Shown piece after piece: positions 27,237-60,381 of a DNA stretch of 64,000 nucleotides (within the stretch, counting starts at the first letter, position 1; each line of letters begins with the position of its first letter). The position numbers and the translations under genes were made by a program. Under the pieces are notes generated by a model, which made no database searches, was not told the DNA's origin, and saw nothing but the letters and a program-made list of their open reading frames with translations. The stretch is taken from the IMG/VR virus record IMGVR_UViG_3300030673_000004, positions 186,001-250,000 of that record, one strand, 5' to 3'.

Positions 27237-27946
27237 CACAAGATGAAACGTTCAATAAAGTTTATGATTTAGCTGCCGAGGGGCGCTCTGATGTTTTGAT
27301 TGCACGTGAGCTAAATATGACATTAGCTCAAGTTATGCGGATACGATCTAGTTTTACTCCCGGTGGAGCACAGGCACATGAAGTACGACAAGTTCAACAG
27401 ACAACTCAGTCTGTAAGCACTCCTCAAGGCAGTTTAACAGTAAGAGCAACTGCTATTTCTAACCAACAGCCTGCACCTGCTCAGAAAATTAAGCCTAAGG
27501 AGATGCTGGAGCGTCTCGCTATTGAGATAGATGAGTGTCTTGTCGTAGCCTTATCTGAGTATAAAGCAGATCCTACGTCGGAGACAGGTTATAATGCTTT
27601 ATCCAGCTTAGCGACTACTTTTAAGGAATTGATTAAATCACGTGAATCTCTAGATGATCCACAAGAGATTGCTGAGTCTGTTGTGCTGCAGATTTTACGT
27701 CCTATGATATATGCGGTATTGAAAAGCTTGATTACATCTTTTGATCATGTAAACAAAGAATTATCTCTAACATTTAATTCAGATAATCAGAGGCATAAGT
27801 TCAAAGAGGCAATTCAAGATATGTTGAAGTCTCTGACATCTGATATAAAAGTAGATTATAATAGAGGTGTTCATACATTAGAAGATGTTTATGGTGTAGA
27901 TTTATCCCATCTATTTTTGAAAAAGGCAGATTCTACTGATGTTTGA
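27233..27946 (+). CDS. helical protein with N-terminal HTH
   Basis: YDLAAEGRSDVLIARELNMTLAQVMRIR. Confidence 0.65.
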   Translation: MTQDETFNKVYDLAAEGRSDVLIARELNMTLAQVMRIRSSFTPGGAQAHEVRQVQQTTQSVSTPQGSLTVRATAISNQQPAPAQKIKPKEMLERLAIEIDECLVVALSEYKADPTSETGYNALSSLATTFKELIKSRESLDDPQEIAESVVLQILRPMIYAVLKSLITSFDHVNKELSLTFNSDNQRHKFKEAIQDMLKSLTSDIKVDYNRGVHTLEDVYGVDLSHLFLKKADSTDV

Positions 27947-30296
27947 AGTTGCTTTAGCTGCGGATCCTACCAAAGTTAAGTTTGTTGGTCAGGGTGACTT
28001 GTCATCTGTTACAGTTGGCTTTGAGTTTGAGTTTATTTGCAAGACTCGTATATGGCCTGAACTAGGTAAGCGGGTAAGAGAGCAGTTAGGTCCTGTTGGT
28101 GCCGTTACTAATTTATATGGTAAGCACCACGGCAGGGAAGATACTTTAACTGCTTGGCATATTACGGGTGACACATCTATTAAAGATTATAATCTGGGTG
28201 ATTCTGATGATGAGCCTCCTCGTGAGGCCGGTGAAACAGACGCTGCATATAATGCACGTATTGATAAAGCTCTGGGTGAGACAGGTGTAGAATTGGTATC
28301 TCCTGTGCTAAAAGCAACAGACGCGGTTGCCACGTTGAATAAAGCTCTAACGCTGCTTAAGAGTATCGACGCACGGACTAACAGCTCTTGCAGTATGCAC
28401 GTTACGTTAGGTCATCCTAAGATAAAGGACTACTTAGACCCAATTAAATTTGCCATATTTTTGGGTGATGATAAAATTCTACAGCGTTTTGAGCGAACAA
28501 GTAATGAGTATGCTCATAGTATATTAGATGCTGTCCGGGAGTCCTTGGCAGATGCTAGTTCTTTTCACGAGAAAGTTCAAGATGCTGATACAGAGCAGGA
28601 ATCTGATGATTCTTGGGATCCGGATCAGTTAGAACAGGAGATTGAACAGACACCTTTTGAAGTAATGAAGACCGAGTTGCTGTCGAAATCAGCTAAGGGC
28701 GCGGGCTTCATCCATGATGGTCGTAGGAAGCTACTGACATACTTGACCAAGTTTAATTCGGGTATCTATGATGATAGGTACCACTCGGTAAATTTGCAAA
28801 AAGTAAATTCAAATGTAGTGGAATATAGAGCTATTGGGTCTAATTATCTAGGCGAAAATCCGGCTGCTCTATCAGGCATGGTTCGTAGGATCATGTATGC
28901 GCTGCTCGTAGCTGTTGGCGACGTGTCTAGTCCTAAGCTAGATCAAGCCTATGCGGCTCTTCTAACTCGTAGATTTGGTTTGTCAGACCCCTCACGGGAG
29001 GACAAGTTGATAAAATCTGCGGGTGGGTCAGCAGGTTCTGTAACACCTTATGTGTTTACTAGAGCAATACCTATCGGTTCTGATTTGCACTTAGATGTGA
29101 CAATGCAGGTTATACCAGACTATGCATTAAATTGCATACGTTTTTCTGTTGTATTTGCTGTTATTCGTGATAATGCAAGTGTTTTAGGTCATTCTCATGA
29201 TTTGGTATCTCTTAAATATATAGGTAAAGTATCTTTTAACAGAGACGTTAAAACAGGAAAACTTACCTTCGGTGGTGCTAACCATACAGATGTTTCAATA
29301 GACCATCATACAAAAAGCGGATCTGCTGCCTATCTTACAAGGCAAGAGGTCGCTAAAATTTATGCAGAGATCAAAGCAATAATAGCAACGCCTACTAATC
29401 CTTATCTAAATAATGGCTGGAAAGCTCTTGCGATTACGTCACGTTCTTACGGTTTATCGCCTGCTGATGCCATTAATATTATCCGGGTTGGTCGTAGTTC
29501 CTTATTTTCTAAGGATAACAACGAAAGGCTTAAGGATTTAATGGCCTATTTAGTTGTCCAGCATATGAATCCTACTGATGTTCAATCAAAGTATGCTGAG
29601 AATAAAAATGAGCATGTTGATAGGGCTAGGACATTCCTAAAAGGAAATGCATTTGGTCAAGTAGTTAGTATGTATCATATGGATGTGGATGATCTAGTGG
29701 ATAACTTGGGTATTGTTTTATATAAGAAAGCTAAGCAGCGTATAGTAGATCCGTTTAATCTAGATCTTTCTGGATTTGTACCAAATATGACATTGTATAA
29801 TGTAGCTGGTAATTCGTTAGCTTTAGCTGGTATGGGTTACTTTACTAGTTATGCTGAGGTCGGTGATTTTATTGTTAATCACTTTGTAGCAAGTAACTCC
29901 GTAGTAGCTACGTTAGCAACACTCAGTTCTTATCTACTTAGTGCTGCGCTGAGGCTACGGGAGTATCTTCATGGCTTGACAGCTTACAATCTGTCACAGA
30001 TGGCTACTGATTATGCTCGTTATGCTGGTATCTTAACACAAGAGTATTCTGATAAGATTTCCGCGCAGTTTAGGCTTGGGTCAAATTTCTCTACAATGCT
30101 CTTTAATGCCTCCCGTGATACTATTTGTGTTCAAATTGTGTTGTACGTGTATAAGTACAAATTCAATAATGCACTGTTGGGTAGTTCTGAAAATCTAGAG
30201 GAAGCTCTAGGTTTTCTTTACTCTACAGACCCTCGTCTGGTACATTTCTGGCAGCGTACTGTAGTTCCTGCTTTGTTGCACCAATCACAGCAATAA
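27939..30296 (+). CDS. Amidoligase_2 (COOH-NH2 ligase) family protein, paralog 1
   Basis: VGFEFEF, WHITGDTSI, GVELVSP, TNSSCSMHVT, YHSVNL, VEYR. Confidence 0.85.
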   Translation: MFEVALAADPTKVKFVGQGDLSSVTVGFEFEFICKTRIWPELGKRVREQLGPVGAVTNLYGKHHGREDTLTAWHITGDTSIKDYNLGDSDDEPPREAGETDAAYNARIDKALGETGVELVSPVLKATDAVATLNKALTLLKSIDARTNSSCSMHVTLGHPKIKDYLDPIKFAIFLGDDKILQRFERTSNEYAHSILDAVRESLADASSFHEKVQDADTEQESDDSWDPDQLEQEIEQTPFEVMKTELLSKSAKGAGFIHDGRRKLLTYLTKFNSGIYDDRYHSVNLQKVNSNVVEYRAIGSNYLGENPAALSGMVRRIMYALLVAVGDVSSPKLDQAYAALLTRRFGLSDPSREDKLIKSAGGSAGSVTPYVFTRAIPIGSDLHLDVTMQVIPDYALNCIRFSVVFAVIRDNASVLGHSHDLVSLKYIGKVSFNRDVKTGKLTFGGANHTDVSIDHHTKSGSAAYLTRQEVAKIYAEIKAIIATPTNPYLNNGWKALAITSRSYGLSPADAINIIRVGRSSLFSKDNNERLKDLMAYLVVQHMNPTDVQSKYAENKNEHVDRARTFLKGNAFGQVVSMYHMDVDDLVDNLGIVLYKKAKQRIVDPFNLDLSGFVPNMTLYNVAGNSLALAGMGYFTSYAEVGDFIVNHFVASNSVVATLATLSSYLLSAALRLREYLHGLTAYNLSQMATDYARYAGILTQEYSDKISAQFRLGSNFSTMLFNASRDTICVQIVLYVYKYKFNNALLGSSENLEEALGFLYSTDPRLVHFWQRTVVPALLHQSQQ

Positions 30297-30419
30297 AAAA
30301 CCGCTGATGGGCGCTCCATCAACGGTTAGAGCAGGTACCAAAGTCATCCGATACAAACACTTCGTTCGCACCGTTTTCTTCTGCTCATAAAGAAAAGATA
30401 CAATTAATATGTGTCCCTG

Positions 30420-30704
30420 TCAACCTAATTTAGGTGGTTCCGGACACCAGTTGCTGATTAATGTATCCATCTCACCGTCTAAGAGCTTTCTGGGTAAGAG
30501 AGCCATAGGTCGTGTGTTCCAAGCACTTATTGCATCTTCTGTAGAGTATTTAGCTGGTCCCACACAGTAACAGTCGCAGCATCGTAGGTAAAACAGGTTG
30601 TTCTGCACGGCAAGTAGCCGTGCATGTAAAGATCCGCAGAACGGACATTCTGCAGGTATAACAGATCCTAGAGGCAACTCAGTGATCTCAGGCAACTCTG
30701 GCAT
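30420..30704 (-). CDS. Lar-like restriction-alleviation zinc-finger protein
   Basis: CPFCG...CCDC..VGP...AISAWNTR. Confidence 0.7.
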   Translation of the reverse strand: MPELPEITELPLGSVIPAECPFCGSLHARLLAVQNNLFYLRCCDCYCVGPAKYSTEDAISAWNTRPMALLPRKLLDGEMDTLISNWCPEPPKLG

Positions 30705-30881
30705 CAGAACTTCTTTCTGTGGGCACCGTAACAAAAAAATTTCAACGTTTAGCACGCAACCAAGAGCTTGAAAAAAGTTCTCAACTTTTTGGTGCTCTTC
30801 TTGATTGCTTGCCTGCTATAAGTTCCGGTGAGATGAGGCTGGATCCTCTCAAAGAAGTTTTCATATCCAATGACTTAAAAG

Positions 30882-32360
30882 ATGGTGATTGCCATGAGTG
30901 ACGCAGAAGATCTTGTCGTTCGGCTGCCTAAGGAGAGTACCTTTAAGCTATCTCCTACAGTTGTCAACATGTTAAGTGATGACAGCGAATACGGGTTGAT
31001 CTGTTTATTATCTGATCGTCAGTTATTCTTGAGCCGTCTGGATGAAGATGGCATAGATTTGCTGATTCACAGCATTGTTAAAAAGTTAGATCCTTTGCAT
31101 AATTGGAGAGTTATTGATCGCATATTTGATATGCCACCTATCTACCGAACACTACAAGATTCTACTAAGAACTCTGTTCTTCATTATCTAGCACAGCGCG
31201 GTGTGGATATCTTTAGGCATGGTAACGTAGATGATTTTGTCTATAGAAATATCTATGGTAATACACCCATACATTGGTTGGCTAAATACCCAGAGTTCCA
31301 TGAGCGCATAGCTGTGCTTCCCTATAGAGTAACGTCAGTCCCTAATGGCATGGGGTTAACAGCCCTGGATGTTATTGAAAAAATACGAGCAGATGCGGAA
31401 GCAGAGCAGATGCGCTTGTCTGTTGTAGCTAGAACAGAAGCTATTGCAAGCTTGCCTTTGAATTATAAATTATCTATAGATGATGGCTCCTTAACTGATT
31501 TTAGGGTTGGTTTTGAGTTTGAATTTGTGTCTGGGTTGAAGCATACACATATTGCTGAGTTGCTTCATTTATCTGGGCGTAAGGTTGGTGTTGTGCGAGA
31601 TGATTACGGTATTCCTAGAGATGTAGGTTATGATTCTTGGCATGTAACAGGAGACCCATCTATTGCTGCACATGACGGAGATGATGGCATAGAGTTGATA
31701 TCACCACCAATGATGTTTGGTGATATTCGTAAGACGCTTCAGTTTGTTTGGAAAATGCTTTCTGATATTAATGCCTATACAAATGAGTCTTGCGGATTAC
31801 ATATGACTATTAGTCATACGGGTAATGGCTTCAATACTCCTGGATTCAATCCTATTAAATTGGCGTTGTTTCTTGGTGATGATGATATATTAAAAACTAT
31901 GGATAGGGAAGATAACTATAATTGTAGGTCTTTTTTAGCTTATGTTCGTGGTATTATTCACGCAGATCTAAAAACAGGATTTAAGCATATTATCGGTCAG
32001 CGAAGTAACCCGGATAAGCCCGCACACCTGCGTGATCATGAGACGCTAGAGAAGATACCAACTACGTATGACGCGGTATCTGTTGTAGATAAGATTGCTT
32101 TAGATCCTCGAATGAAACTTAGGTTAGTTAATTCGTTTGATAGAAATCTAAGTATAAATTTGGTTAAGTTGCAGCCGGGATTCGGGTCAACACCCCTGCT
32201 GGAGTATCGTGCGCCAGGTAACGGATGGTCCTACAAGAAACCAGAGATGTTTGAAAACATTGCTCGTAGGCTGGCAGCGTCGGCACAGGTAGCTCTACAC
32301 CCGGAAGAAGCCTTAGACACGTACAAGGCTTTGATCGTCAGAGATATAATACACGGTTAG
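30882..32360 (+). CDS. ankyrin-repeat plus Amidoligase_2 fusion, paralog 2
   Basis: NSVLHYLA, GNTPIHWLA, GLTALD; then VGFEFEF, GIELISP, TNESCGLHMT, LEYR. Confidence 0.8.
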   Translation: MVIAMSDAEDLVVRLPKESTFKLSPTVVNMLSDDSEYGLICLLSDRQLFLSRLDEDGIDLLIHSIVKKLDPLHNWRVIDRIFDMPPIYRTLQDSTKNSVLHYLAQRGVDIFRHGNVDDFVYRNIYGNTPIHWLAKYPEFHERIAVLPYRVTSVPNGMGLTALDVIEKIRADAEAEQMRLSVVARTEAIASLPLNYKLSIDDGSLTDFRVGFEFEFVSGLKHTHIAELLHLSGRKVGVVRDDYGIPRDVGYDSWHVTGDPSIAAHDGDDGIELISPPMMFGDIRKTLQFVWKMLSDINAYTNESCGLHMTISHTGNGFNTPGFNPIKLALFLGDDDILKTMDREDNYNCRSFLAYVRGIIHADLKTGFKHIIGQRSNPDKPAHLRDHETLEKIPTTYDAVSVVDKIALDPRMKLRLVNSFDRNLSINLVKLQPGFGSTPLLEYRAPGNGWSYKKPEMFENIARRLAASAQVALHPEEALDTYKALIVRDIIHG

Positions 32361-32408
32361 TAGAAAACCGCCTTGACAGGCATACGACTTTTAGTTATTA
32401 TTGTCTGT

Positions 32409-34787
32409 ATGCCTCAAGCAACATCCTACCATGATTTAACTCTTGACGAACTCTCTAACCACCCTGTCAAACTCGGCTTTGAATTTGAATTTGCTAGCGC
32501 ACAGTCTCATCGACGTGTTGGTGAGGCTGTACGTGAGCTTTTCGGTGACGGCTCTGTTGGTGTTGTAGAAGATTGTTACAACGCACATCGCCATGGTGGC
32601 TACACGAAGTGGAACGTTACTGCCGATAGTTCCATCAACCCAACCCATGCTGCTGGTTATCGTGTGGAGTTGGTATCACCAATTCTCACGCCATCCGTGC
32701 TACATGACACATTGACGAAAGTTTTTGCGTATCTACGTGACGCACACGCTGTAACTAATTCGTCTACAGGTATGCATGTGACAGTATCACATCCTAATGT
32801 GAATGAAGAGTACAGCAGTTTTGATCCAATTAAGATGGGCATCTTTATGGATGACATCGGGATGACACTGAAGTATCGGGGTAATCTGAATACTCATTAT
32901 GCTCAGAGCACAATGGCTTTGTTTGCACAAGGACATCGTGAAGGTTTCAACAACCATCGCATTCAGGCACGGGACTTGAATGTTCCCTGGTCTGGTGATC
33001 CTGAGATTTTATTTTTGTTGGCAACTAAGGAGCCACGAATTCGTCGTGTCTTGATTGAGGCAGAGAAATATCGCTCTATCAACCTCAGCAAGATCTGTAA
33101 TCACTGTGTGGAGGTTCGTTCTCCTGGTGGTGACTACTTGGGTGCTGGTGCAGATGAAGCTATCGAAACGGCACGTAAGATCCTTTCGTCTCTTGTTTAC
33201 GCATGCATCCCTGATGCTGGTTTTGATGAGTATCATACTCGTTTCATGTCGTTTTTTGAGTCGCGCATCAAGCCTCGTCCTTGTCCTCAACTTGTTAATA
33301 GCGTTGACCACGTGACCTTTACGGTTCCTGGTTATGCTAATATGCATGTCTGTGTTACCTTTCGTCGCAAGGCTTTGAACCATGAGGTTGACGGGTGGAA
33401 CTTGATGCACAATCGTGCTGTCTTTATTCACAATATCAAAGTTAGTGCCATGTTGCCTGAATCCGAGGCCACTCGTAATGGTATCTTCAGCCCAGCTTCA
33501 TCAACAGCTTCTCGTCAATTTGATATTAACGTGCAGTTTAATTCTCTCTGTGCGGAAGACTCTCTGCTCGATGAGAACTACGAGGAGTTCCTTCGTAGGC
33601 ATGGCGATGTACTTCCTGTTACTCCTCAGAGTGTTAGCTTCTCAAGTACCCTGGTTGATGTAAACCAACACACGGCGGCTCTTGAGCTTGTATCCGCTAT
33701 TCGGACTATGCTCGGTTCGCCTGCATTTAAGCAGGCGTTGACTTCTAATGTAACCGCTGCTCTGCAGCGTTCTATTCTTGATACAGGAATTCAGCGTATC
33801 TTGTCGTTTGTTCAGGTTGGCGCGGATGCTCCTTCTATTTTGAACAATGACTTGTGGACACGTCCGTTGAGCGCTCTGAATGAATCGTTGCAAGCAACTC
33901 GCCGTGCGGCAGAGCGTGCTTCTCAGATTGTGAACCAGGATCAGTTCAGTACAAAGCTGGCTGCTCGCTTGGCTGCTCTTCGGACTGCTGCTACGTCTAG
34001 CTCTTGGACAGGTTCTGCACCTATTTCTGCCGTTACTTCGGAGTCGTCCGCTAATCACGAGGATATTTCGGCAGATGGAAATATCTGGAGTATGGTTCGC
34101 CCAATGTTTAGAAATACGCATTTTGGGAAGCGCCTATGTGACATTGCTCGTGGGATTGATGGCCCGGTAGAGGGAGATCCACTAGCATCACCTGCTACAG
34201 TTTTGCATGATACAGCAGTGGCACTAAAGATCCTGCTTGATGCACCACCTGTTATGGATCTTCTGCGTTGTCTGCAATCGTCTATGCATGTATCTCATCG
34301 TGTAGCTCAGGCGCTTACTCGTCTTGTGGCTAATTATGTTCAGCCCCTAAGCTCTGAGTATATGCAAGGTTTGCCTGTGGCTGCTCGTAGTGGTGTAATT
34401 GCTGATTGCTTTAGCATTGCTGTTACGGTCTCTCGTTTGAGTGACTATGTTACTCATCCCGCCCTTGGAACAGAGGCAGAGCGACAAGCCTTTACTTCTT
34501 GGTTGACTGCCATTAAGACTCGTGTAGCTTGTACGCTGACTCGATTGGATGATATACATGGTGTGGCAGCCTTGGTACATAGCCCTATTCGTTTGGCTCA
34601 TGCGATTGTCAATGTTGCTTCTGAGCATAGAATGACACCGATGTTGACGTTGCTCGCCCTTGAGACCGCTCATGTTGCTGATACGATTCTGCGTCCTACT
34701 CACGTTGGTCGTATCCGTACTGAGATTGCTCGTCTGACTTATGTAGCTGGGCCGGATGCTGATGATGGTGGTGACGAGGACGCATAA
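32409..34787 (+). CDS. Amidoligase_2 family protein, paralog 3
   Basis: LGFEFEF, VELVSP, TNSSTGMHVT, YRSINL, VEVRSPGG; ATG 7 nt after TTGACA(32373)-N17-TATTAT. Confidence 0.85.
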   Translation: MPQATSYHDLTLDELSNHPVKLGFEFEFASAQSHRRVGEAVRELFGDGSVGVVEDCYNAHRHGGYTKWNVTADSSINPTHAAGYRVELVSPILTPSVLHDTLTKVFAYLRDAHAVTNSSTGMHVTVSHPNVNEEYSSFDPIKMGIFMDDIGMTLKYRGNLNTHYAQSTMALFAQGHREGFNNHRIQARDLNVPWSGDPEILFLLATKEPRIRRVLIEAEKYRSINLSKICNHCVEVRSPGGDYLGAGADEAIETARKILSSLVYACIPDAGFDEYHTRFMSFFESRIKPRPCPQLVNSVDHVTFTVPGYANMHVCVTFRRKALNHEVDGWNLMHNRAVFIHNIKVSAMLPESEATRNGIFSPASSTASRQFDINVQFNSLCAEDSLLDENYEEFLRRHGDVLPVTPQSVSFSSTLVDVNQHTAALELVSAIRTMLGSPAFKQALTSNVTAALQRSILDTGIQRILSFVQVGADAPSILNNDLWTRPLSALNESLQATRRAAERASQIVNQDQFSTKLAARLAALRTAATSSSWTGSAPISAVTSESSANHEDISADGNIWSMVRPMFRNTHFGKRLCDIARGIDGPVEGDPLASPATVLHDTAVALKILLDAPPVMDLLRCLQSSMHVSHRVAQALTRLVANYVQPLSSEYMQGLPVAARSGVIADCFSIAVTVSRLSDYVTHPALGTEAERQAFTSWLTAIKTRVACTLTRLDDIHGVAALVHSPIRLAHAIVNVASEHRMTPMLTLLALETAHVADTILRPTHVGRIRTEIARLTYVAGPDADDGGDEDA

Positions 34788-34840
34788 ACCTCATAGGCTA
34801 CTTTTGTAGTGTTTGAGGCATTCATGGGAGTAGCCTTGGG

Positions 34841-34920
34841 AGCCTTGTCTTGAAAGAGACAGGGCTTTTTCGTGCTCTGCTCTATGAAACAAAAAGCCGC
34901 TTGTCATAAAGCGGCTTTTT
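34841..34920. terminator. two terminator hairpins between convergent genes
   Basis: AGCCTTGTCT...AGACAGGGCTTTTT and AAAAGCCGCTT...AAGCGGCTTTTT. Confidence 0.7.
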
Positions 34921-34941
34921 GTATTTGGATGCTCTTGCGGC

Positions 34942-35358
34942 TTACTTTATAACTTTGAGTCCCCATGGGCACTTGCACTGCATTCTAACGTTACGGGCCG
35001 CTATCCCAATAAGAGAAAATGGCAGTCTTGGGTGGCTGCATGGGTCTACAGAGCCACCCTTATGCACATAGCAGGGACAGTGGGTACATGTCGCAGGTTG
35101 TGGCCCGATATTGATGCGAGCTTCTCTAGCACGCTCTAACTCATCTAAATCTTGGTGCTTTATGTTCTCTTCAAACCTATCTCGACTGATAGCTTTTTTC
35201 TCTGCTACTGTTTGGCGACGATGCACCGTGTTTGATGGCCTCATGATACGAGAACATTTATCAGAGCAATACTTTTGCTTAGGTGAGTTGGGTACAAAAG
35301 TTTTGCAGCATACGGGGCAAGCTATAGCTTTTTTAGTTTTCCAAAGGGCTGTTGTCAT
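34942..35358 (-). CDS. zinc-binding hypothetical protein
   Basis: CPVC.KTF......QKYCSDKC; promoter TTGACT-N17-TATATT 8 nt upstream. Confidence 0.7.
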   Translation of the reverse strand: MTTALWKTKKAIACPVCCKTFVPNSPKQKYCSDKCSRIMRPSNTVHRRQTVAEKKAISRDRFEENIKHQDLDELERAREARINIGPQPATCTHCPCYVHKGGSVDPCSHPRLPFSLIGIAARNVRMQCKCPWGLKVIK

Positions 35359-35416
35359 ACATACTGAATATAGGGAAGAGTGCTCGTTTAGTCAATCAAA
35401 AAGATAACTTCTGAGT

Positions 35417-36886
35417 ATGGATACTGTAATATCTGCTGTTGTGCCCGGCGCAAAGTTAAATAATTTAGCTGTTGACCTCTCTAAGATAACGGTCGGCTTT
35501 GAATTTGAATTTATATCCCCAATTAGTCATCAGAGTTTTGCCGATGTTATGCGTGACACAGACCTAGATTATAAGATTGGTGCCGTAACAAAGGAATACG
35601 CTGGTCACAAAACTAAGTATCCCGGCAAAAATTTATATAGTTTCTGGCACATAACAGGTGATGATTCTATTGATACGGCTGCTGTGTCTGACGATACTAA
35701 GTCCCTTTACGGGATTGAAGTTATCTCACCTGTGTTACCGTTAGCTAAGGCTAAGAAGGCTCTTCTTGATATCGTAGCTATAATTAAACGTGCTGGTGGC
35801 ACTACGAATGAATCTTGTGGTTTGCATATTACTTTTGGACATCCTTTACTGACTACCGATCTGATAAACTTTGATCCTCTAAAGTTCGCTGTATTTATGC
35901 AGGAAGATAAGGTACTGGAACGGTTTGATAGAGAACGAAATGAGTATGCTCAAAATTTCTCATCTAGGATATTAAAGGCTATGTACGAAGAAATGCACGA
36001 GCTAAAGAATCGTGTGTTCCAGAGAGAGCAGCCGAATTTTGAAGAGACGGACGAGGCTAATTACCCTGAAAATTATTATACTATTTTACCTAATGAGGTT
36101 ACCGGGCCTGCTCTTACAGAGGAGAACTTACAAGAGTTCTTGACATCTCTACGAGTACGTCAGCGTTTTGCCCTGTACTCGCACTATCTGAGTATTAATT
36201 TGATAAAACTTCGTAACCACTGTGTGGAGGTTCGTTCTCCTGGTGGTGACTACTTGTCTCAAGATGCTCAAGGGCTTGCTCAGATGGTTCTACATATGGC
36301 TCGGTGCCTTGCAGTAGCTTTGGATCCAACCTTGCTTGAAACGCAATATGTATTAGCTGTTCGTAGAATGCTAAAACAGTATAATGCACCTAAGCAGGCT
36401 ACAGATGCCAAACGTGCCCAGCAAGAATTAAACGTTAATGAGGTGAGTAAAGCATCAGGCCAGACCTCAATCAGCGGTAAGGTTAAGATAGCTGGTCAGT
36501 CTGTACTTGTTACCATAACACATGGTGCTCCAGATAATCCTAGAGCTGATGCTAGTGTTGCTTGGGCTGTTATGGTAGAAGAGAAACATCGTATTGCTCT
36601 ACGCTTATATGTAGATAATTTTGGAATAACTGAAGTTGTGCTGCCCAGTAAGTATACTCTGCAGACATACCCTGTAGTAGCTGATGTCGCTCAAGAGGTA
36701 TCTAACCAGATTATCCGAGCAGCATCTAAAATGGGTCCTGTTCCGGGCTTGGTGAAGATATCACCTAGCATATCTGCTTATAAGAAACTTTTAGCACGTT
36801 TCCCTAAGCTAGCTGCTATAAAAATGAATGTATCTACGTTCCAGTCTCGTATGCGTGAAAGCGGCTTGACGCCTGTGGATGCTTGA
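35417..36886 (+). CDS. Amidoligase_2 family protein, paralog 4
   Basis: VGFEFEF, WHITGDDSI, GIEVISP, TNESCGLHIT, VEVRSPGG. Confidence 0.85.
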   Translation: MDTVISAVVPGAKLNNLAVDLSKITVGFEFEFISPISHQSFADVMRDTDLDYKIGAVTKEYAGHKTKYPGKNLYSFWHITGDDSIDTAAVSDDTKSLYGIEVISPVLPLAKAKKALLDIVAIIKRAGGTTNESCGLHITFGHPLLTTDLINFDPLKFAVFMQEDKVLERFDRERNEYAQNFSSRILKAMYEEMHELKNRVFQREQPNFEETDEANYPENYYTILPNEVTGPALTEENLQEFLTSLRVRQRFALYSHYLSINLIKLRNHCVEVRSPGGDYLSQDAQGLAQMVLHMARCLAVALDPTLLETQYVLAVRRMLKQYNAPKQATDAKRAQQELNVNEVSKASGQTSISGKVKIAGQSVLVTITHGAPDNPRADASVAWAVMVEEKHRIALRLYVDNFGITEVVLPSKYTLQTYPVVADVAQEVSNQIIRAASKMGPVPGLVKISPSISAYKKLLARFPKLAAIKMNVSTFQSRMRESGLTPVDA

Positions 36887-36931
36887 TTCTGGACATTACC
36901 AATATTATCAACATAGTAATTGGAGTTTTCA

Positions 36932-37693
36932 ATGAATCATGTATACGGTTGGAAAAAGGATACTAAGGATCCTCGGGATAAGATTTTTAGAGCTACTCCA
37001 CCAACTCAGGGATTACCTGCCTCGGTAGATTTGCGACCCACCTGTCCGCCTGTTTTGGACCAGGGTCAGTTGGGTGCCTGTACGAGTCATGCTTTAGCTA
37101 ATGCGCATTTGTTTGCTCAGATAAAAGAAACTGGTGGGCATGATGCCCTACCATCTAGGCTTTTTATTTATTACAAAGAACGTGAGCTAGAAAATACTAT
37201 TGCAGAAGATTCTGGTGCCCAGATACGCGATGGTGCTAAAGTTCTTGCTTCTTTTGGTGCTCCTCCAGAATCGGACTGGCCCTATGATGTAACTAAGTTT
37301 GCTGTTGCTCCACCTCAGGTGGCTGTAGCGGACGCCACATCGCATAAAGCGCTTCAGTATCATAGCGTGATTCAAACTGAAAATGATATCAAGACAGCTC
37401 TCGCTAGTGGTTTTCCTATTGTTTTCGGTATAATGTTATTTCAGTCGTTTGAATCAGATGTAGTAGCTAAGACAGGTTTGGTTCCTCTGCCAAATCAAGC
37501 AGTTGAACCGTGCCTTGGTGGCCATGCAATTTTGATGGTTGGTTATGATGATACGAAGCGTTTGTTCACTATAATGAACTCTTGGGGTCCTGCTTGGGGT
37601 GATAAGGGATTCTTTTATCTTCCTTATGACTATGTCCTTCGTGCTGACTTAGCTCAAGACTTTTGGGTTATTTCTGTAGTTCAAGAATCTTGA
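36932..37693 (+). CDS. papain-like (C1A) cysteine protease
   Basis: LPASVDLR, DQGQLGAC, GGHAILMVGY, IMNSWG..WGDKG. Confidence 0.92.
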   Translation: MNHVYGWKKDTKDPRDKIFRATPPTQGLPASVDLRPTCPPVLDQGQLGACTSHALANAHLFAQIKETGGHDALPSRLFIYYKERELENTIAEDSGAQIRDGAKVLASFGAPPESDWPYDVTKFAVAPPQVAVADATSHKALQYHSVIQTENDIKTALASGFPIVFGIMLFQSFESDVVAKTGLVPLPNQAVEPCLGGHAILMVGYDDTKRLFTIMNSWGPAWGDKGFFYLPYDYVLRADLAQDFWVISVVQES

Positions 37694-37719
37694 TCTGCCT
37701 TTAAGCTGCTCTGCGTGTG

Positions 37720-37747
37720 AACCTCTGGATGTAGTCCGGAGGTTTTT
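37720..37747 (+). terminator. intrinsic terminator
   Basis: AACCTCTGGA-tgtag-TCCGGAGGTTTTT. Confidence 0.65.
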
Positions 37748-38200
37748 ATGTTTCTTCTTACGCATGACTATGATTTTGGGGAGCGTGTAAAGCTCTGTCA
37801 TGATGTAGAAGACTATCAAATTTGGATGGTTGTAGCTATTCAAACATCCCTAGACGGTCATCAAGACTACACTTTGGCATCTGGTGACACTGAATACATA
37901 GCTGCTTGCGATGAGTTGGCTCCTATATCCTCGGCACATAAGCCACCCTATTCAACACTTGTTGAGTCTAACTATGAGCTTGGTGCCGCTGTCTATATTG
38001 TTCATGATGAAGAAGCTCATTTATGTACAATTATGCGTATTAACGTTTGTTGGGATAACAGTATCCTTTATCAGGTATTGTGTGGTGCTGATTTTATGTA
38101 TTGGGCAGTGAGTAATGAGCTGTCCGTAGATATGCCATCTGATCCTAGTATACTTGACGATGATAGTGCTTTTGATGACAGTCAAACAACCTCTGAATAA
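37748..38200 (+). CDS. hypothetical protein with two internal SH3/KOW-like repeats
   Basis: YDFGERVKLCHD...DEL and YELGAAVYIVHD...NEL. Confidence 0.55.
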   Translation: MFLLTHDYDFGERVKLCHDVEDYQIWMVVAIQTSLDGHQDYTLASGDTEYIAACDELAPISSAHKPPYSTLVESNYELGAAVYIVHDEEAHLCTIMRINVCWDNSILYQVLCGADFMYWAVSNELSVDMPSDPSILDDDSAFDDSQTTSE

Positions 38201-38227
38201 GGTACGTTTTATCTGATGGGGTGCTAG

Positions 38228-39244
38228 ATGTTCATTCCTAATCATACTGCACAGGATAGTGCAGTCGCTGCTGTTGTCCCAAAGTTGGACCTTTCTCAGG
38301 TTGACTTGTCTAAGTTGACTGTTGGTTTTGAGTTTGAATTTGTATCTCGGTTATCACATAAATCATTTGCTAAGTCTCTTCAGCTTGCTCAACCTACCTG
38401 GAAGATTGGCACTGTTCAAGATAAGCACGGACTTCCTAAGAATGTGAAGGACGTTGAGAAATACTCTGTTTGGAATGTAACTAGTGATGAGACTGTTCAG
38501 GAAGATGCTGAAGACCTTCTATCCTTGACACCTCATTATAGTATTGAGTTGATCTCTCCTGTACTTCAGTTGAATCAAGTTGGTGATATTCTTACACGTG
38601 TTTTTTCCTTGATTAAATCTACTGGTGGTAAAACTAACGAGAGTTGCGGTTTGCACGTTACATTCGGCCACCCCGACATTAATTCTGCGTTAACAAAGTT
38701 TGATCCGTTGAAACTTGGTATTTTTCTCAGAGAGGATAATTTGTTATCTAGATTCGGTAGAACGGATAATGCATTTGCTGATAATTTATCTAAGCGTATT
38801 GTTCAAGCGATCAATACTGAGATAGGATCGTCTGGGGATCAAGTTACTACACTAAAAGGATTGAATGTCTTTGATCATACACCAACATCCATACCCACGA
38901 CTGATAAAACAGGTCCGAAATTAACTGATGCTAATTTAGCTCAGATACTAGTAAGTCCGGCTTTCCGTAAGCGCATGGCTATGGTGGATCATTATACTAA
39001 TATCAGCTTACAATACTTGTCTAAGCATCGTGTAGAGATTCGGGGCATGGGCGGCGATTATTTGAATGTTTCAGTCAAAGAGCTTACAGGACGAGTACTT
39101 CACATGGCCCGCTGCGTGGCTATCGCTCTGATGCCTACGGCTTATGTTCCGCAGTATGTTGCAGCCGTCCGTAGAATGATGCCTGTGTACAAAGCACCTA
39201 AGAAGCCTATGTGGACACCTGCTAAGTCCGACGGGGATGAGTGA
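38228..39244 (+). CDS. Amidoligase_2 family protein, paralog 5 (catalytic domain only)
   Basis: VGFEFEF, IELISP, TNESCGLHVT, HYTNISL, VEIRGMGG. Confidence 0.85.
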   Translation: MFIPNHTAQDSAVAAVVPKLDLSQVDLSKLTVGFEFEFVSRLSHKSFAKSLQLAQPTWKIGTVQDKHGLPKNVKDVEKYSVWNVTSDETVQEDAEDLLSLTPHYSIELISPVLQLNQVGDILTRVFSLIKSTGGKTNESCGLHVTFGHPDINSALTKFDPLKLGIFLREDNLLSRFGRTDNAFADNLSKRIVQAINTEIGSSGDQVTTLKGLNVFDHTPTSIPTTDKTGPKLTDANLAQILVSPAFRKRMAMVDHYTNISLQYLSKHRVEIRGMGGDYLNVSVKELTGRVLHMARCVAIALMPTAYVPQYVAAVRRMMPVYKAPKKPMWTPAKSDGDE

Positions 39245-40704
39245 TGTTTATTCCTTTTGAAACTACCGCCGCAGTAGTTCCTGGTCTAGATTTTAGTGAT
39301 GTTAACATATCTAGACTTACTGTTGGTTTTGAATTTGAATTCATATCTCCTATTAGTCACAAAAAGTTTGCACAAGCTTTAAGTAAAAAGTACCCAAGTT
39401 GGAAAATTGGTGTGATTTCCAGTATTTACAATGCTCATGAGCAACTTGGTGCTGCTATGTATAATTCTTGGAATATAACAGGGGACGGTTCTATTGACGC
39501 TTCTCCTAATGAATTTGGGATAGAGCTTATTTCTCCTGTATTGAAATTATCCCAAGTATCAAAAATACTTGAATCTGTATTTTCTTTACTCAAGGCGCTT
39601 AAGTGTGAAACAAATGATAGTTGTGGCTTGCATGTTACCTTTGGTCATCCGAAGATTACAGCAAATTTAACATATTTTAATCCTCTTAAGTTCGGTGTAT
39701 TCTTGCAGGAGGATAAGTTATTAGCTCGTTTTGGTAGAACGGATAACGGTTTTTCCTTAAATACGTCAAAAGAGATATTGTATGAGTTACACGAAGAGAT
39801 GTTCCGAGATGACGTTACTAGAGTTGGTACGTCTATTATCTCACCCTGGTCACGAACACAATATGATAAAGAAACTAGCCGGACAGGTCCTAAGGCGACT
39901 GATGCGAACTTAGCTAAAGTTTTATTAGATCCTAGGCTGCGTCGTAGGTTAATCCCAATAGATCATTACCAAAACATAAGTTTATCTAAAATTAAAAATA
40001 ATCTAGTTGAAGTTCGTGGTATGGGTGGTAACTATTTAGCACAGAGTACTACAACACTTGTAAATATTGTTAAACACCTTGCTCGTTGTCTTGTGATCTC
40101 TTTATCGCCAACTGCATATCAGGCTCAATACATACTAGCTGTTAAACGGATGCTTAACGAGTACAACCCGAAAGACTCTGAGGTGGTTAAGCCGCAGGAT
40201 TTAATACCTGACGATATAGACGCAGAATATCCTACGTTGGATCTCTGGTCATCTGATGGTGGTCGTTTAATTCTATTTGGAACTAAGGAGACTCCCAGTA
40301 GAGGAGACTTCAAATTAAGTACAAATAACAACAGTAGTATTCATTTACATAATACTACTTTATATATAAAACTAAGCATAGATAGCATTAAAGACGGGGT
40401 ATCTTCTGATTTTGATTTTGAGCGTGTAGTTACTCAGGAGTTAGATTGGATCATAAGTATCTGTGTTAAGCTGAAAGCATCAATTAACAAACATACATCT
40501 ATTCCAAGTTTGACTAAATTTGCTATTACCACAGACAATATTAAGAAAATAGAACACTACTTTCCTTGGGCAGTGCATCTTGAATTGCCCCCAGATATCT
40601 TACAGATAGCTTATATAGGTTTTATACAGTCTTCTGATTTTCGTACCTGCTCCATTAAAAATCGACAATATTTTATGCGTGAGTGGAAAGCCAAAGTCCG
40701 GTAA
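39244..40704 (+). CDS. Amidoligase_2 family protein, paralog 6
   Basis: VGFEFEF, WNITGDGSI, GIELISP, TNDSCGLHVT, VEVRGMGG. Confidence 0.85.
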   Translation: MFIPFETTAAVVPGLDFSDVNISRLTVGFEFEFISPISHKKFAQALSKKYPSWKIGVISSIYNAHEQLGAAMYNSWNITGDGSIDASPNEFGIELISPVLKLSQVSKILESVFSLLKALKCETNDSCGLHVTFGHPKITANLTYFNPLKFGVFLQEDKLLARFGRTDNGFSLNTSKEILYELHEEMFRDDVTRVGTSIISPWSRTQYDKETSRTGPKATDANLAKVLLDPRLRRRLIPIDHYQNISLSKIKNNLVEVRGMGGNYLAQSTTTLVNIVKHLARCLVISLSPTAYQAQYILAVKRMLNEYNPKDSEVVKPQDLIPDDIDAEYPTLDLWSSDGGRLILFGTKETPSRGDFKLSTNNNSSIHLHNTTLYIKLSIDSIKDGVSSDFDFERVVTQELDWIISICVKLKASINKHTSIPSLTKFAITTDNIKKIEHYFPWAVHLELPPDILQIAYIGFIQSSDFRTCSIKNRQYFMREWKAKVR

Positions 40705-58561: not shown

Positions 58562-58694
58562 CCCTATTCGCCGCACATCTTGCGGTGATTAGAGCTGCTA
58601 TTCACCGCACATCTCGTACAGTCTAAGTTTTAAGGAATAATTATTACTTGGCTTGTATGTTGACAAAATTACATATGTGAAGTATATTTGTACT

Positions 58695-59875: not shown

Positions 59876-60381
59876 CGAAGATCAAATCCCAAGATACTAA
59901 GGATCGAGCTCTGTTCCTGGATATTGATGGTGTCCTAAATAGTCACGACTGGACTGTGCTTGAATACAAGAAACGTCTCCTTCAGGGCATCAAAAAGCCT
60001 ATCTATGCTGAGTGCGATCCTTTGGCTGTTGCTTTGCTGAGTGACTTAGTCGTGTTGTCGCACGCAACGATAATCATATCTAGCGCTTGGCGGCAGTTTA
60101 TGTCCATTCATAAAATTAGTGAGTATCTGGAGACACTGGGTTTTAATCATGCTGCATGTATTGTTGATGCAACGCCCGTAATCACCGGCTGCATACGTGG
60201 TGCTGAGATTGATCAATATCTACAAGAGCATCCCGAGATTAAGCACTATTGCATATTAGATGATGACTCAGATATGTTAGCTAAACAGAGAGCTCACTTT
60301 GTTCGTGTTTCTGGCTCTGTTGGTTTAACTCAGGCAAACGTTCTTCAGTGCCTGACTGTTCTTGACCGGGATATACTATGA
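59872..60381 (+). CDS. HAD-family phosphatase (Swiss Army Knife RNA-repair HAD-like)
   Basis: LFLDIDGVLN, IISSAWR, RGAEI, ILDDDSDM. Confidence 0.85.
   Translation: MTKIKSQDTKDRALFLDIDGVLNSHDWTVLEYKKRLLQGIKKPIYAECDPLAVALLSDLVVLSHATIIISSAWRQFMSIHKISEYLETLGFNHAACIVDATPVITGCIRGAEIDQYLQEHPEIKHYCILDDDSDMLAKQRAHFVRVSGSVGLTQANVLQCLTVLDRDIL

What the first reader, a model, noticed from the sequence alone, without database searches (positions are those of the whole stretch)
27939..40704. Six Amidoligase_2 paralogs in 13 kb with a papain-like protease in the middle
Seen: six ORFs (27939, 30882, 32409, 35417, 38228, 39244) share GFEFEF / W..T.D.(S/T) / E(L/V)(V/I)SP / TN.S..(L/M)H / E.R motifs and a PxK(F/L/M) motif, but have unrelated tails from almost none to about 450 aa. 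A complete C1A protease lies between paralogs 4 and 5. Known: this glutamine-synthetase-fold family is related to peptide-tagging ligases and occurs in phages, typically in low copy. Inference: a diversified writer set with substrate-selecting tails plus a possible eraser or maturase, modifying host or virion proteins or the cell envelope.
Basis: partly seen in the sequence, partly recalled or inferred. Interest (0 to 1): 0.75.

Follow-up and report, generated by a model that had tools for sequence, protein, structure and literature searches.

The report
Expanded amidoligase gene array in jumbo phage
A 375-kb peat and freshwater phage carries 16 intact copies of a glutamine-synthetase-like ligase, six of them in one old, conserved array and nearly all with a unique add-on region, but the papain-like protease in the middle is a recent insertion that does not belong to the set.

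Summary
Six ORFs pass the Pfam Amidoligase_2 cut-off and a complete C1A peptidase lies between copies 4 and 5.

All six keep the ExE / E / H / ExR residues. A model of copy 5 matches the glutamine-synthetase catalytic domain at Z 10.6.

The window lies in a complete 375.5-kb jumbo phage that has 16 such genes at five sites. Twelve other large phage records have 1-4 each.

The six-gene array recurs gene for gene in two related phages. Its first three members recur in two more distant ones. The six types therefore diverged long ago and each has been kept.

The add-on regions are orphan sequences. They are under purifying selection but evolve about 2.5-5.5 times faster than the catalytic domains.

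- The gene is a clean ~830-bp insertion absent from all four relatives where the site or its surroundings can be read.
- Its nearest homologues sit in phages with no amidoligase, or with one 73 kb away.
- None of 80 other viral amidoligase loci has one.

The partner found repeatedly is a gamma-glutamyl cyclotransferase (GGACT) domain, which suggests gamma-glutamyl-amide chemistry.

Most likely this is a set of ATP-dependent ligases directed to different targets. Those targets are unknown.

The parts
25752..27236 (+). Conserved 494-aa gene of unknown function that opens the block. Its stop overlaps the next gene's start by 4 bp.
   Evidence: Orthologs lie in the same position in L088 (86%), L089 (67%), L092 and L093. 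No Pfam or PHROG hit. Homologues occur only in this phage clade. dN/dS is 0.05.
27233..27946 (+). Conserved 237-aa gene whose N-terminus looks like a helix-turn-helix by eye. It overlaps the start of copy 1 by 8 bp, so it probably shares an operon with it.
   Evidence: 92% and 84% identical in L088 and L089, always directly upstream of the copy-1 ortholog. Not related to the amidoligase profile.
27939..30296 (+). Amidoligase copy 1 (785 aa). Catalytic domain ~20-345, then a tail with a beta-sheet (371-456) and an all-helical region (468-784).
   Evidence: PF12224 at 44.7 bits. Orthologs are 74%, 50%, 49% and ~32% identical over the full length. The model has pLDDT 68 and the tail has no fold match. 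The tail profile finds only 4 representatives among 1.84 billion proteins, all amidoligase fusions of the same size.
30420..30755 (-). Lar-like restriction-alleviation gene (111 aa) on the opposite strand, in the gap between copies 1 and 2.
   Evidence: PF14354 at 33.3 bits against a cut-off of 28.6. Conserved in L088 (85%), L089 (69%) and L094 (40%).
30882..32360 (+). Amidoligase copy 2 (492 aa; likely start 30894). N-terminal ~200 aa with possible ankyrin-like repeats, then the catalytic domain from ~206 to the end. No tail.
   Evidence: PF12224 at 44.0 bits, residues 207-351. Orthologs are 90%, 75%, 62% and 52% identical. The profile of the N-terminal region gives only sub-threshold PDB hits, all of them ankyrin or DARPin proteins (E 0.01-0.6).
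32409..34787 (+). Amidoligase copy 3 (792 aa from ATG 32409). Catalytic domain followed by a ~490-aa Ala/Ser-rich tail that looks helical by eye.
   Evidence: PF12224 at 47.0 bits. Orthologs are 64%, 51%, 46% and 43% identical. Tail dN/dS is 0.34 against 0.06 for the domain.
34942..35358 (-). Conserved Cys-rich 138-aa gene on the opposite strand, between copies 3 and 4.
   Evidence: 78% and 66% identical in L088 and L089. Only a sub-threshold NinG N-terminal match (E 0.0016).
35417..36886 (+). Amidoligase copy 4 (489 aa). Catalytic domain plus a ~160-aa tail.
   Evidence: PF12224 at 52.6 bits. Orthologs are 89% and 72% identical. dN/dS is 0.017 for the domain and 0.089 for the tail.
36920..37693 (+). 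C1A papain-like cysteine peptidase (257 aa) with no signal peptide or long prodomain visible by eye. It is a lineage-specific insertion and not part of the conserved array.
   Evidence: PF00112 at 44.9 bits. Best solved match 3ois, E 4e-52. No tblastn match at E<=10 in L088-L094. The DNA alignment shows a clean indel at about 36877-37705. Both junctions appear in independent freshwater metagenome contigs. It is the only C1 peptidase in the genome.
37719..37745 (+). Conserved hairpin that contains the ribosome-binding site of the 150-aa gene.
   Evidence: 12-pair stem found. The sequence is conserved in L088 and L089. Its function was not tested.
37748..38200 (+). Conserved 150-aa gene with an internal duplication and an acidic C-terminal end, directly upstream of the tail-less copy 5.
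   Evidence: Orthologs are 82% and 65% identical and in the same place. The two halves align with score 48 against 22.8 +/- 4.5 for shuffles, 0 of 1000 as high. No Pfam hit. The complex prediction with copy 5 gave no answer.
38228..39244 (+). Amidoligase copy 5 (338 aa), catalytic domain only.
   Evidence: PF12224 at 49.0 bits. The AlphaFold model has pLDDT 82.4 and pTM 0.81. It matches glutamine-synthetase catalytic domains at Z up to 10.6 over ~190 residues, and Foldseek returns GshF, glutamine synthetase and YbdK. Orthologs are 92% and 76% identical.
39241..40704 (+). Amidoligase copy 6 (487 aa). Catalytic domain plus a ~170-aa tail that diverges fast.
   Evidence: PF12224 at 42.1 bits. The L089 ortholog is 54% identical by BLAST over the domain (58% in the codon alignment) and 27% over the tail. 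The L088 ortholog (485 aa) runs off the end of the locus.

Best explanation
The region is the largest block of a lineage-specific expansion of ATP-dependent carboxylate-amine ligases (Pfam Amidoligase_2, glutamine-synthetase fold) in a clade of environmental jumbo phages.

Shown:
- There are six diverged copies in the window and 16 in the genome. All keep the metal- and phosphate-binding ExE, E, H and ExR residues.
- All but the tail-less copy 5 consist of one ~300-aa catalytic module plus a different orphan region. For copy 2 that region is N-terminal.
- The six types are one-to-one orthologous across related phages down to ~32% identity for copy 1, so they are old and each is kept.
- The add-on regions are under purifying selection but change about 2.5-5.5 times faster than the catalytic modules.
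- The papain-like peptidase is a recently inserted accessory gene (a 'moron') and not part of the set.

Inferred:
- Each enzyme activates a carboxylate with ATP as an acyl-phosphate and joins it to an amine on a different macromolecular target, either a host or a phage protein. The add-on region picks the target.
- The bond is probably a gamma-glutamyl amide. The domain found repeatedly next to viral amidoligase arrays, including one site in this genome, is a gamma-glutamyl(amine) cyclotransferase (GGACT), which would undo such bonds.
- The setting points towards host takeover or counter-defence. A Lar-like anti-restriction gene lies inside the array and an anti-Pycsar Apyc1 homologue lies beside another cluster. 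One copy next to baseplate genes suggests that some may travel with the virion.
For: - Family and fold.
- Catalytic residues: G33, E35, E37, W82, D87, E107, P111, H143, E270, R272 and G275 (copy-5 numbering) are invariant in 14 paralogs plus 6 orthologs. Two further diverged copies keep the motifs.
- Copy number: 16 genes here against 1-4 in twelve other large phage records, using the same profile.
- Origin of the expansion: 14 own copies fall on one side of a branch against 83 other viral sequences, SH-aLRT 97.
- Conserved array: L088 and L089 carry all six in the same order and with the same sizes. L093 and L094 carry copies 1-3 before their contigs end.
- Add-on regions: unrelated by BLAST and hhalign. 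They have no paralogs in the genome, no Pfam or PHROG hit and no fold match. The copy-1 tail is found only in orthologs. dN/dS is 0.02-0.07 for domains against 0.09-0.34 for tails.
- Ankyrin-like hint in copy 2.
- GGACT link: a 1014-aa protein with a C-terminal GGACT domain lies directly upstream of the copy at genome 313963. GGACT ORFs abut or sit inside amidoligase arrays in 7 of 80 other viral loci. The same pairing is listed for prophages in PMC11318856.
- Counter-defence setting: Lar-like gene and Apyc1 homologue.
- Protease excluded.
Against: - No substrate, product or activity is shown for any member of this family here. I also found no experimental study of one in the searched literature.
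- The choice between macromolecular and small-molecule targets rests only on the architecture.
- The GGACT link holds for one of five sites in this genome and 7 of 80 other loci, with no background rate measured. None lies in the window.
- The single-clade result involves very long branches, so long-branch attraction cannot be excluded.
- Synonymous sites are near saturation, so dN/dS values are rough.
- The ankyrin hint is below significance.
- The complex prediction for copy 5 with the 150-aa protein gave no answer.
Confidence: 0.55

Rival explanations
1. The enzymes modify small molecules or the cell envelope. They would make or decorate metabolites, polyamines or peptidoglycan and surface-receptor components, for example to block superinfection, as was predicted for phage amidoligases in the 2009 survey of the superfamily. 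The add-on regions would serve localisation or regulation.
For: - The nearest solved folds are small-molecule ligases: glutamine synthetase, gamma-glutamylcysteine ligase and YbdK.
- The genome encodes a class-II glutamine amidotransferase about 4.6 kb from one amidoligase cluster and three GGACT domains. Both also act on small gamma-glutamyl compounds.
- PMC11318856 cites the cell-wall receptor prediction for phiEco32.
Against: - Sixteen copies, 15 of them with different large orphan regions that are conserved in orthologs, are hard to explain by one or a few metabolites.
- No amidotransferase lies in or near the window array.
- No GATase was found within 10 kb in 80 other viral loci at phmmer sensitivity.
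- No signal peptides or membrane segments are visible by eye in the printed sequences. This was not tested with a predictor.
Confidence: 0.2
2. Writer plus eraser or maturase, the first reader's model: the papain-like protease works with the six ligases, removing their adducts or maturing them or their substrates.
For: The protease gene lies on the same strand between copies 4 and 5, is intact with a full catalytic set, and is present in the same place in independent metagenomes.
Against: - It is absent from the same slot in L088 and L089. It was also not found in L093 and L094, whose contigs end before that site. All keep the array or its first members.
- On the relationship of the three genomes, one gain is more parsimonious than two losses.
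- Its closest homologues are in FLC9, which has no amidoligase, and in LR756511, which has one 73 kb away.
- 0 of 80 other viral amidoligase loci have one.
- There is one protease for 16 ligases at five sites.
- A homologue in phage MMB025 is annotated as an endolysin.
Confidence: 0.05
3. DNA hypermodification: the ligases add amino-acid or polyamine groups to modified bases in phage DNA. Amidoligase and amidotransferase genes accompany thymidine-hypermodification clusters in some viral contigs.
For: - PMC8989533 reports amidoligase and glutaminotransferase Pfam matches beside 5-HMUDK / aGPT-Pplase genes.
- The window holds a radical-SAM gene at 58653-59660.
Against: - No thymidylate-synthase-like hydroxymethylase is found in the complete genome.
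- One base modification does not need 16 ligases with different large add-on regions.
- None of the array's conserved neighbours is a nucleotide-modifying enzyme.
- The kinase and pyrophosphorylase families of that pathway were not searched for.
Confidence: 0.05
4. The proteins are mainly virion components, head-internal or tail/baseplate proteins. The ligase module would be kept for a single assembly-time reaction such as cross-linking, or for action just after injection, and the add-on regions would be structural attachment parts.
For: - The window array lies between the portal (4701-6845) and a connector-like gene (40714-43641).
- The copy at genome 313963 sits between a GGACT-bearing 1014-aa protein and a Baseplate_J gene.
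- Many viral homologues are embedded in proteins of 1000-1700 aa.
Against: - In related jumbo phages structural and replication genes are interleaved, so position is weak evidence.
- No add-on region matches any structural PHROG or Pfam family.
- There are no proteomic data.
- This rival overlaps with the best explanation: packaged effectors would satisfy both.
Confidence: 0.15

Closest known systems
Pfam PF12224 Amidoligase_2 / PHROG 2443 'amidoligase enzyme' (glutamine-synthetase-like COOH-NH2 ligases of phages, prophages and conjugative elements, predicted by Iyer et al. 2009, Mol Biosyst 5:1636)
   Same: The domain passes the curated cut-off in all six copies. They have the glutamine-synthetase-like fold, conserved ExE / E / H / ExR residues and a viral setting.
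   Different: - Copy number is 16 per genome and 6 in one array, against 1-4 in other large phages.
- All but one copy (copy 5) are fused to a different orphan region.
- The sequences are very divergent, with branches of 1-2.5 changes per site against a median of 0.26.
- No amidotransferase lies beside the window array.
Viral amidoligase plus GGACT (gamma-glutamyl cyclotransferase, AIG2-like) gene pairs and small arrays, e.g. IMG/VR loci L044, L004, L016, L027, and the prophage pairs listed in PMC11318856
   Same: Tandem amidoligase paralogs on one strand. This genome has a GGACT domain directly upstream of one copy (genome 313241-313585).
   Different: - In those loci the GGACT sits inside or against the array.
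- In the window array there is none. The only gene of a hydrolase family is the unrelated, recently inserted C1A peptidase.
Pup ligase PafA / depupylase Dop (glutamine-synthetase-fold protein-tagging enzymes of Actinobacteria)
   Same: From established knowledge, not tested here: the same broad fold class, and an ATP-dependent gamma-glutamyl-phosphate intermediate joined to a lysine amine. This is the mechanistic precedent for a protein-directed ligase of this fold.
   Different: - No Pup_ligase Pfam match appeared in the scans.
- No Pup-like tag gene was identified.
- The hosts of related phages are Proteobacteria.
- The eraser candidate here is a cyclotransferase, not a ligase paralog.
Glutamine synthetase, gamma-glutamylcysteine ligase (GshA/GshF) and YbdK (GCS2)
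   Same: These are the best structural matches to the catalytic module (Z 9.6-10.6 for glutamine synthetases; Foldseek top hits 3ln6, 8fbp and 1r8g) and have equivalent metal-binding residues.
   Different: - Only ~190 residues superpose, at 8-14% identity.
- The profile finds no PDB relative by sequence.
- The model covers only the region that matches the glutamine-synthetase catalytic domain (chain residues ~117-385), so there is no counterpart of the part that precedes it.
Bacterial C1A peptidase of PDB 3ois (from memory: xylellain of Xylella fastidiosa), for the inserted protease
   Same: Full-length alignment at E 4e-52 with the catalytic Gln/Cys/His/Asn motifs, and only a short N-terminal extension instead of a long prodomain.
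   Different: It is encoded by a phage as a single inserted gene. Homologues are scattered in unrelated large phages, one of them annotated as an endolysin.

Membership tests
Pfam PF12224 Amidoligase_2 | The profile HMM score is above the curated gathering cut-off (22 bits). | tested here: met
   42.1-52.6 bits for all six window ORFs. 31.5-53.9 bits for eight further genome copies. Two more diverged copies are found only with the clade's own profile; one of them scores a sub-threshold 18 bits in Pfam.
Pfam PF12224 Amidoligase_2 | Glutamine-synthetase-like catalytic fold. | tested here: met
   The model of copy 5 (pLDDT 82.4, pTM 0.81) aligns to glutamine-synthetase catalytic domains at Z up to 10.6, with 206 chains at Z>=8. 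The AlphaFold DB cluster hits for copy 1 are named amidoligases.
Pfam PF12224 Amidoligase_2 | Conserved acidic, His and Arg residues that bind metal and ATP in this fold (ExE on the first strand, E, H, ExR). | tested here: met
   E35, E37, E107, H143, E270 and R272 are invariant in 20 sequences and in the six-way alignment. Equating them with the glutamine-synthetase metal ligands is from knowledge of that enzyme, not from a residue-level superposition.
Pfam PF12224 Amidoligase_2 | ATP-dependent ligation of a carboxylate to an amine. | not testable with these tools
   Needs enzyme assays.
Phage amidoligase + class-II glutamine amidotransferase (GAT-II) system | The amidoligase gene is adjacent to, or in an operon with, a GAT-II gene. 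| tested here: not met
   The only GATase_4 gene of the genome is at 71201-72043. That is about 140 kb from the window array and about 4.6 kb from the cluster at 76661-82292, with five other genes (among them Apyc1 and two Metallophos) between. 0 of 80 other loci showed one at phmmer sensitivity.
Amidoligase + GGACT pairing | A GGACT/AIG2-like domain gene abuts the amidoligase gene or genes on the same strand. | tested here: not met
   Not met for the window array: the nearest GGACT domain is at genome 261114, about 34 kb downstream of the array. Met for the copy at genome 313963 and in 7 of 80 other viral loci.
Pup ligase / depupylase (PafA, Dop) | Match to the Pup_ligase family and presence of a Pup-like tag gene. 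| tested here: not met
   The Pfam scans at E<=0.01 list only Amidoligase_2 for the six proteins. No small tag gene was recognised. The 150-aa neighbour gave no answer in the complex prediction.
Peptidase family C1 (papain-like), subfamily C1A, for ORF 36920-37693 | Profile match above cut-off, with the catalytic Gln-Cys-His-Asn in order. | tested here: met
   PF00112 at 44.9 bits against 20.7. Alignment to 3ois over residues 9-255 at E 4e-52. The motifs DQGQLGAC, GGHA and NSWG are seen in the sequence.
Functional module 'amidoligase array + protease' | The protease co-occurs with the array in related genomes. | tested here: not met
   Absent in L088 and L089, which keep the whole array, and not found in L093 and L094, whose contigs end before the site. 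The protease is present without amidoligase in FLC9. 0 of 80 other loci have one.

The most novel reading that the evidence does not exclude
A clade of environmental jumbo phages carries an arsenal of target-specific protein-modifying ligases: 16 glutamine-synthetase-fold enzymes, nearly all steered by a private, fast-evolving recognition region. They would write gamma-glutamyl-type amide marks on different host or phage proteins during takeover or counter-defence. GGACT-domain proteins would act as the erasers. This would be a new post-translational modification system in phage-host conflict, comparable in logic to the effector expansions of intracellular bacteria.
Probability: 0.3. Interest if true: 0.85.

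Novelty: new variant of a known kind. Interest (0 to 1): 0.6.

Why it matters
As far as the searched literature shows, no phage Amidoligase_2 enzyme has a known substrate. The family has rested on a 2009 prediction.

This phage clade offers 16 intact, individually conserved copies, 15 of them with distinct add-on regions. That is a natural panel for finding what such ligases modify.

The panel also allows two tests. One is whether the add-on regions set target choice. The other is whether GGACT domains reverse the marks.

If the targets are host proteins, this would add an ATP-driven amide-ligation mark to the known phage takeover chemistries (ADP-ribosylation, acetylation, RNAylation).

The report also removes a tempting but wrong link, that of the protease as eraser. 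It points to the partner domain that does recur with these arrays.

Tried and rejected
- Stop-codon recoding. Copies 2 and 3 share a frame across TAG TAG at 32358-32363. Rejected because code 11 gives normal ORF statistics and the shared frame is not kept in L089 (coordinates).
- A seventh hidden amidoligase in the conserved upstream genes. hhalign probabilities were 0.1% and 2%.
- A shared second domain in the tails. hhalign between ortholog-based tail profiles gave at most 31% probability, for copies 4 and 6.
- Identity of the tails. Nothing usable came from Pfam, PHROGs, two ESM Atlas queries (best scores 0.52 and 0.45), Foldseek against PDB and AlphaFold DB clusters, or a full HMMER scan of 1.84 billion representatives, which found only orthologs.
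- The 150-aa neighbour as an in-trans tail or substrate of copy 5. The complex prediction scored 0.00, which the tool states is no evidence either way.
- Promoter and terminator scan. Counts are at shuffle level.
- Close relatives among cultured phages. Megablast found none and tblastn with copy 5 found one weak hit.
- The 2009 amidoligase paper (PMC3268129) is not held, so what I say of it is from memory or from papers that cite it.
- The first copy-number survey with the Pfam model undercounts. It found 3 of 4 copies in L044. I repeated it with the clade profile.

Full report
**1. What is in the sequence**

The window is bases 186001-250000 of a 375,537-bp virus record with direct terminal repeats, rated complete. 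GC content is 42.8% and the standard bacterial code gives normal ORF statistics.

Between 27939 and 40704 on the + strand, six ORFs pass the Pfam Amidoligase_2 (PF12224) cut-off of 22 bits with 42-53 bits. ORF 36920-37693 passes Peptidase_C1.

There are small corrections:
- The extra ~200 residues of copy 2 are N-terminal.
- Ortholog alignments favour starts at 30894 for copy 2 and 32409 for copy 3.

**2. The enzymes look active**

An AlphaFold model of the tail-less copy 5 was built on 20 paralog and ortholog sequences (pLDDT 82.4, pTM 0.81).
- It superposes on the catalytic domain of glutamine synthetases at Z up to 10.6 over about 190 residues, with 206 chains at Z>=8.
- Foldseek ranks a gamma-glutamylcysteine ligase (3ln6), glutamine synthetases and YbdK first.
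- No solved structure is detectable by sequence.

In the 20-sequence alignment A2 these residues are invariant (copy-5 numbering): G33, E35, E37, W82, D87, E107, P111, H143, E270, R272 and G275. By knowledge of glutamine synthetase, ExE, E, H and ExR are the metal- and phosphate-binding positions. That equivalence is an inference and was not checked by a residue-level superposition.

**3. The array is part of a much larger expansion**

The Pfam model finds 14 copies in the genome. A profile built from the clade's own sequences finds 16 genes:
- three at 76661-82292 (- strand)
- two at 128226-133739
- four at 146405-159410
- the six in the window
- one at 313963-315579

The two extra copies keep the motifs. 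One reads GAEYEM / ELVSP / TNESCGMH / EYRSPGG and the other GYEFEF / ELITPP / TNASCGLH / ELRAMGG.

With the same profile, twelve other large phage records that hold the family have 1-4 copies. The six of those rated at least 90% complete (316-361 kb) have 1, 2, 1, 1, 2 and 1. An earlier count with the Pfam model undercounts.

A tree of 14 own domains and 83 other viral domains puts the own copies on one side of a branch (SH-aLRT 97). The window six group with two copies from 76-80 kb (97). The own branches are very long, 1-2.5 changes per site against a median of 0.26, so long-branch attraction cannot be excluded.

**4. The array is old and each member is kept**

A search with copy 1 found full-length orthologs at 74%, 50%, 49% and about 32% identity.

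The contigs behind them show the same gene order. This is the order, with identities to the window phage given for L088 and then L089:

| Gene, in order | L088 | L089 |
|---|---|---|
| 494-aa gene | 86% | 67% |
| 237-aa gene | 92% | 84% |
| copy 1 | 74% | 50% |
| Lar-like gene, opposite strand | 85% | 69% |
| copy 2 | 90% | 75% |
| copy 3 | 64% | 51% |
| Cys-rich 138-aa gene, opposite strand | 78% | 66% |
| copy 4 | 89% | 72% |
| 150-aa gene | 82% | 65% |
| copy 5 | 92% | 76% |
| copy 6 | cut by the locus end | 54% (domain only) |

Two more distant relatives, L093 and L094, have the two upstream genes, copy 1, a variable set of small genes, copy 2 (52-62%) and copy 3 (43-46%) before their contigs end.

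The six types had therefore already diverged in the common ancestor of a broad clade and have been kept one by one.

**5. The add-on regions**

They share nothing with each other by BLAST or by profile-profile comparison. The best value is 31% probability, between copies 4 and 6. They have no paralogs elsewhere in the genome and no Pfam or PHROG match.

The full-length model of copy 1 (pLDDT 68) shows a five-stranded sheet (371-456) followed by an all-helical region with pLDDT 70-93. Foldseek finds no partner for it in PDB or the AlphaFold DB clusters.

A profile of that tail, run against 1.84 billion representative proteins, finds four proteins. All are 780-815-aa amidoligase fusions.

The N-terminal region of copy 2 gives only sub-threshold PDB hits, but all eight are ankyrin-repeat proteins (E 0.01-0.6). 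This is a hint, not a result.

Against L088, non-synonymous change is far below synonymous change in both parts, but the tails change faster. dN/dS for domain versus tail is 0.07 vs 0.18 (copy 1), 0.06 vs 0.34 (copy 3) and 0.017 vs 0.089 (copy 4). Synonymous sites are near saturation, so these values are rough.

**6. The protease does not belong to the set**

- tblastn with the protease finds nothing at E<=10 in L088-L094.
- A DNA alignment of the gap between copy 4 and the 150-aa gene shows flanks that align on both sides of a clean ~830-bp indel (window about 36877-37705) holding just the protease gene.
- The window phage is closer to L088 than to L089. A single gain is therefore the simplest history.
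- The insertion is real. Contigs from independent freshwater metagenomes and another peat sample cover both junctions at 99% identity or more.
- The nearest homologues are in an uncultured 595-kb phage (49.6%; one amidoligase 73 kb away) and in Burkholderia phage FLC9 (43.6%; no amidoligase). A 34% homologue in an Alicyclobacillus phage is annotated as an endolysin.
- None of 80 other viral amidoligase loci has a homologue within 10 kb.
- It is the only C1 peptidase in this genome, which has five amidoligase sites.
- The best solved relative is the bacterial cysteine protease 3ois (E 4e-52).

Other gaps of the array also accept variable genes in relatives. The protease looks like one more inserted accessory gene.

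**7. What does travel with such arrays**

The genome has one class-II glutamine amidotransferase (71201-72043), about 4.6 kb from the cluster at 76-82 kb. Between them lie five genes, including an anti-Pycsar Apyc1 homologue and two metallophosphoesterases.

It has three GGACT domains. One forms the C-terminus of a 1014-aa protein that ends 33 bp before the copy at 313963. That copy is followed directly by a Baseplate_J gene.

In the 80 other viral loci, phmmer with this GGACT domain finds a same-strand GGACT ORF in seven:
- inside a four-gene amidoligase array (L044)
- between two copies (L004)
- abutting the gene (L027, L030)
- just upstream of two tandem copies in a complete 361-kb phage (L016)
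- about 3 kb downstream (L061, L073)
.

A prophage study lists the same pairing (PMC11318856).

GGACT enzymes cleave gamma-glutamyl-amine bonds to 5-oxoproline plus the free amine (established biochemistry). This recurring neighbour is the best clue to the bond these ligases make. I could not measure a background rate, so the association is suggestive only.

**8. Setting**

- The phage comes from peat metagenomes and also occurs in freshwater and wastewater samples.
- Its portal (4701-6845) is about 33% identical to those of PaBG, phiRSL1, BcepSauron and Erwinia/Xanthomonas jumbo phages. A proteobacterial host is therefore likely.
- The gene in the copy 1-2 gap is a Lar-type restriction-alleviation homologue above the Pfam cut-off and conserved in relatives.
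- No thymidylate-synthase-like hydroxymethylase is present, which argues against the 5-hydroxymethyl-uracil route of DNA hypermodification.
- A survey of 224 jumbo phages does not discuss ligases of this fold (PMC7824862).
- My literature searches found no experimental work on a phage member of the family.

**9. Verdict**

The 'diversified writer set' reading is compatible with all the evidence but has no direct proof.

The most likely mechanism is ATP-dependent amide ligation, probably gamma-glutamyl, onto different macromolecular targets chosen by the add-on regions. GGACT domains would be the reversing activity.

The family is known. The 16-fold modular expansion, and its conservation as an ordered array, is a new variant of it.

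Noticed in passing
window 40714-43641 (+): A 975-aa ORF matches a head-tail connector PHROG (residues 211-317) and is interrupted by an intein with a LAGLIDADG homing-endonuclease domain (Intein_splicing 49.5 bits, LAGLIDADG_3 49.1 bits). It directly follows copy 6. In L089 a large gene also follows in that place, but its homology was not checked.
   Followed up: partly
window 50309-52225 (+): A 638-aa ORF has an HTH_OrfB_IS605 domain (32.5 bits) and a sub-threshold Cas12f1-like TNB match. This looks like a TnpB-like gene inside a jumbo phage.
   Followed up: no
window 30420-30755 (-): A Lar-type restriction-alleviation homologue (PF14354, 33.3 bits against a cut-off of 28.6) lies on the opposite strand inside the amidoligase array. 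It is conserved in L088, L089 and L094.
   Followed up: yes
window 34942-35358 (-): A Cys-rich 138-aa gene on the opposite strand between copies 3 and 4 is conserved at 78% and 66% in relatives. Its only family match is a sub-threshold one to the NinG N-terminus.
   Followed up: partly
window 37748-38200 (+) and hairpin 37719-37745: The conserved 150-aa gene is an internal duplication of a ~55-aa unit (score 48 against shuffles of 22.8 +/- 4.5) and ends in an acidic stretch. A 12-pair hairpin conserved in relatives encloses its ribosome-binding site.
   Followed up: partly
window 32358-32363: Copies 2 and 3 are in the same reading frame, separated only by TAG TAG and 9-45 bases. The shared frame also holds in L088 but not in L089, so read-through is unlikely.
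   Followed up: yes
window 4701-6845 (+): Portal protein (phrog_16240, E 1.7e-112), about 33% identical to portals of PaBG, phiRSL1, BcepSauron and Erwinia/Xanthomonas jumbo phages. This places the phage as a distant relative of those non-nucleus-forming jumbo myoviruses.
   Followed up: partly
window 58653-59660 and 60378-61361 (+): A radical-SAM protein (QueE-like and other PHROGs) and an ATP-dependent DNA ligase (phrog_114, E 1.4e-44).
   Followed up: no
genome 73054-73881 (-) = L083:3054-3881: An anti-Pycsar Apyc1 homologue (PF23023, 94 bits against a cut-off of 50). It lies between the glutamine amidotransferase gene and the three-gene amidoligase cluster and is followed by two calcineurin-like phosphoesterases towards the cluster. 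This looks like a counter-defence neighbourhood.
   Followed up: partly
genome 310886-313930 (+) = L086:5886-8930: A 1014-aa protein with a C-terminal GGACT/AIG2 domain (residues 786-898). It lies directly upstream of an amidoligase (313963-315579), which is followed by a Baseplate_J gene (315579-316970).
   Followed up: partly
L093:5942-7658 and L094:4019-5592: The gap between copies 1 and 2 holds different small genes in different relatives, including a DNA-ligase OB-domain gene in L094. The array's intergenic slots appear to be insertion hot spots.
   Followed up: partly
loci L003-L082 (IMG/VR): In many other viral amidoligases the first-strand motif (profile positions ~15-35) is separated from the rest of the domain by an insert of ~150 aa. 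Many of these domains are embedded in proteins of 1000-1700 aa.
   Followed up: no
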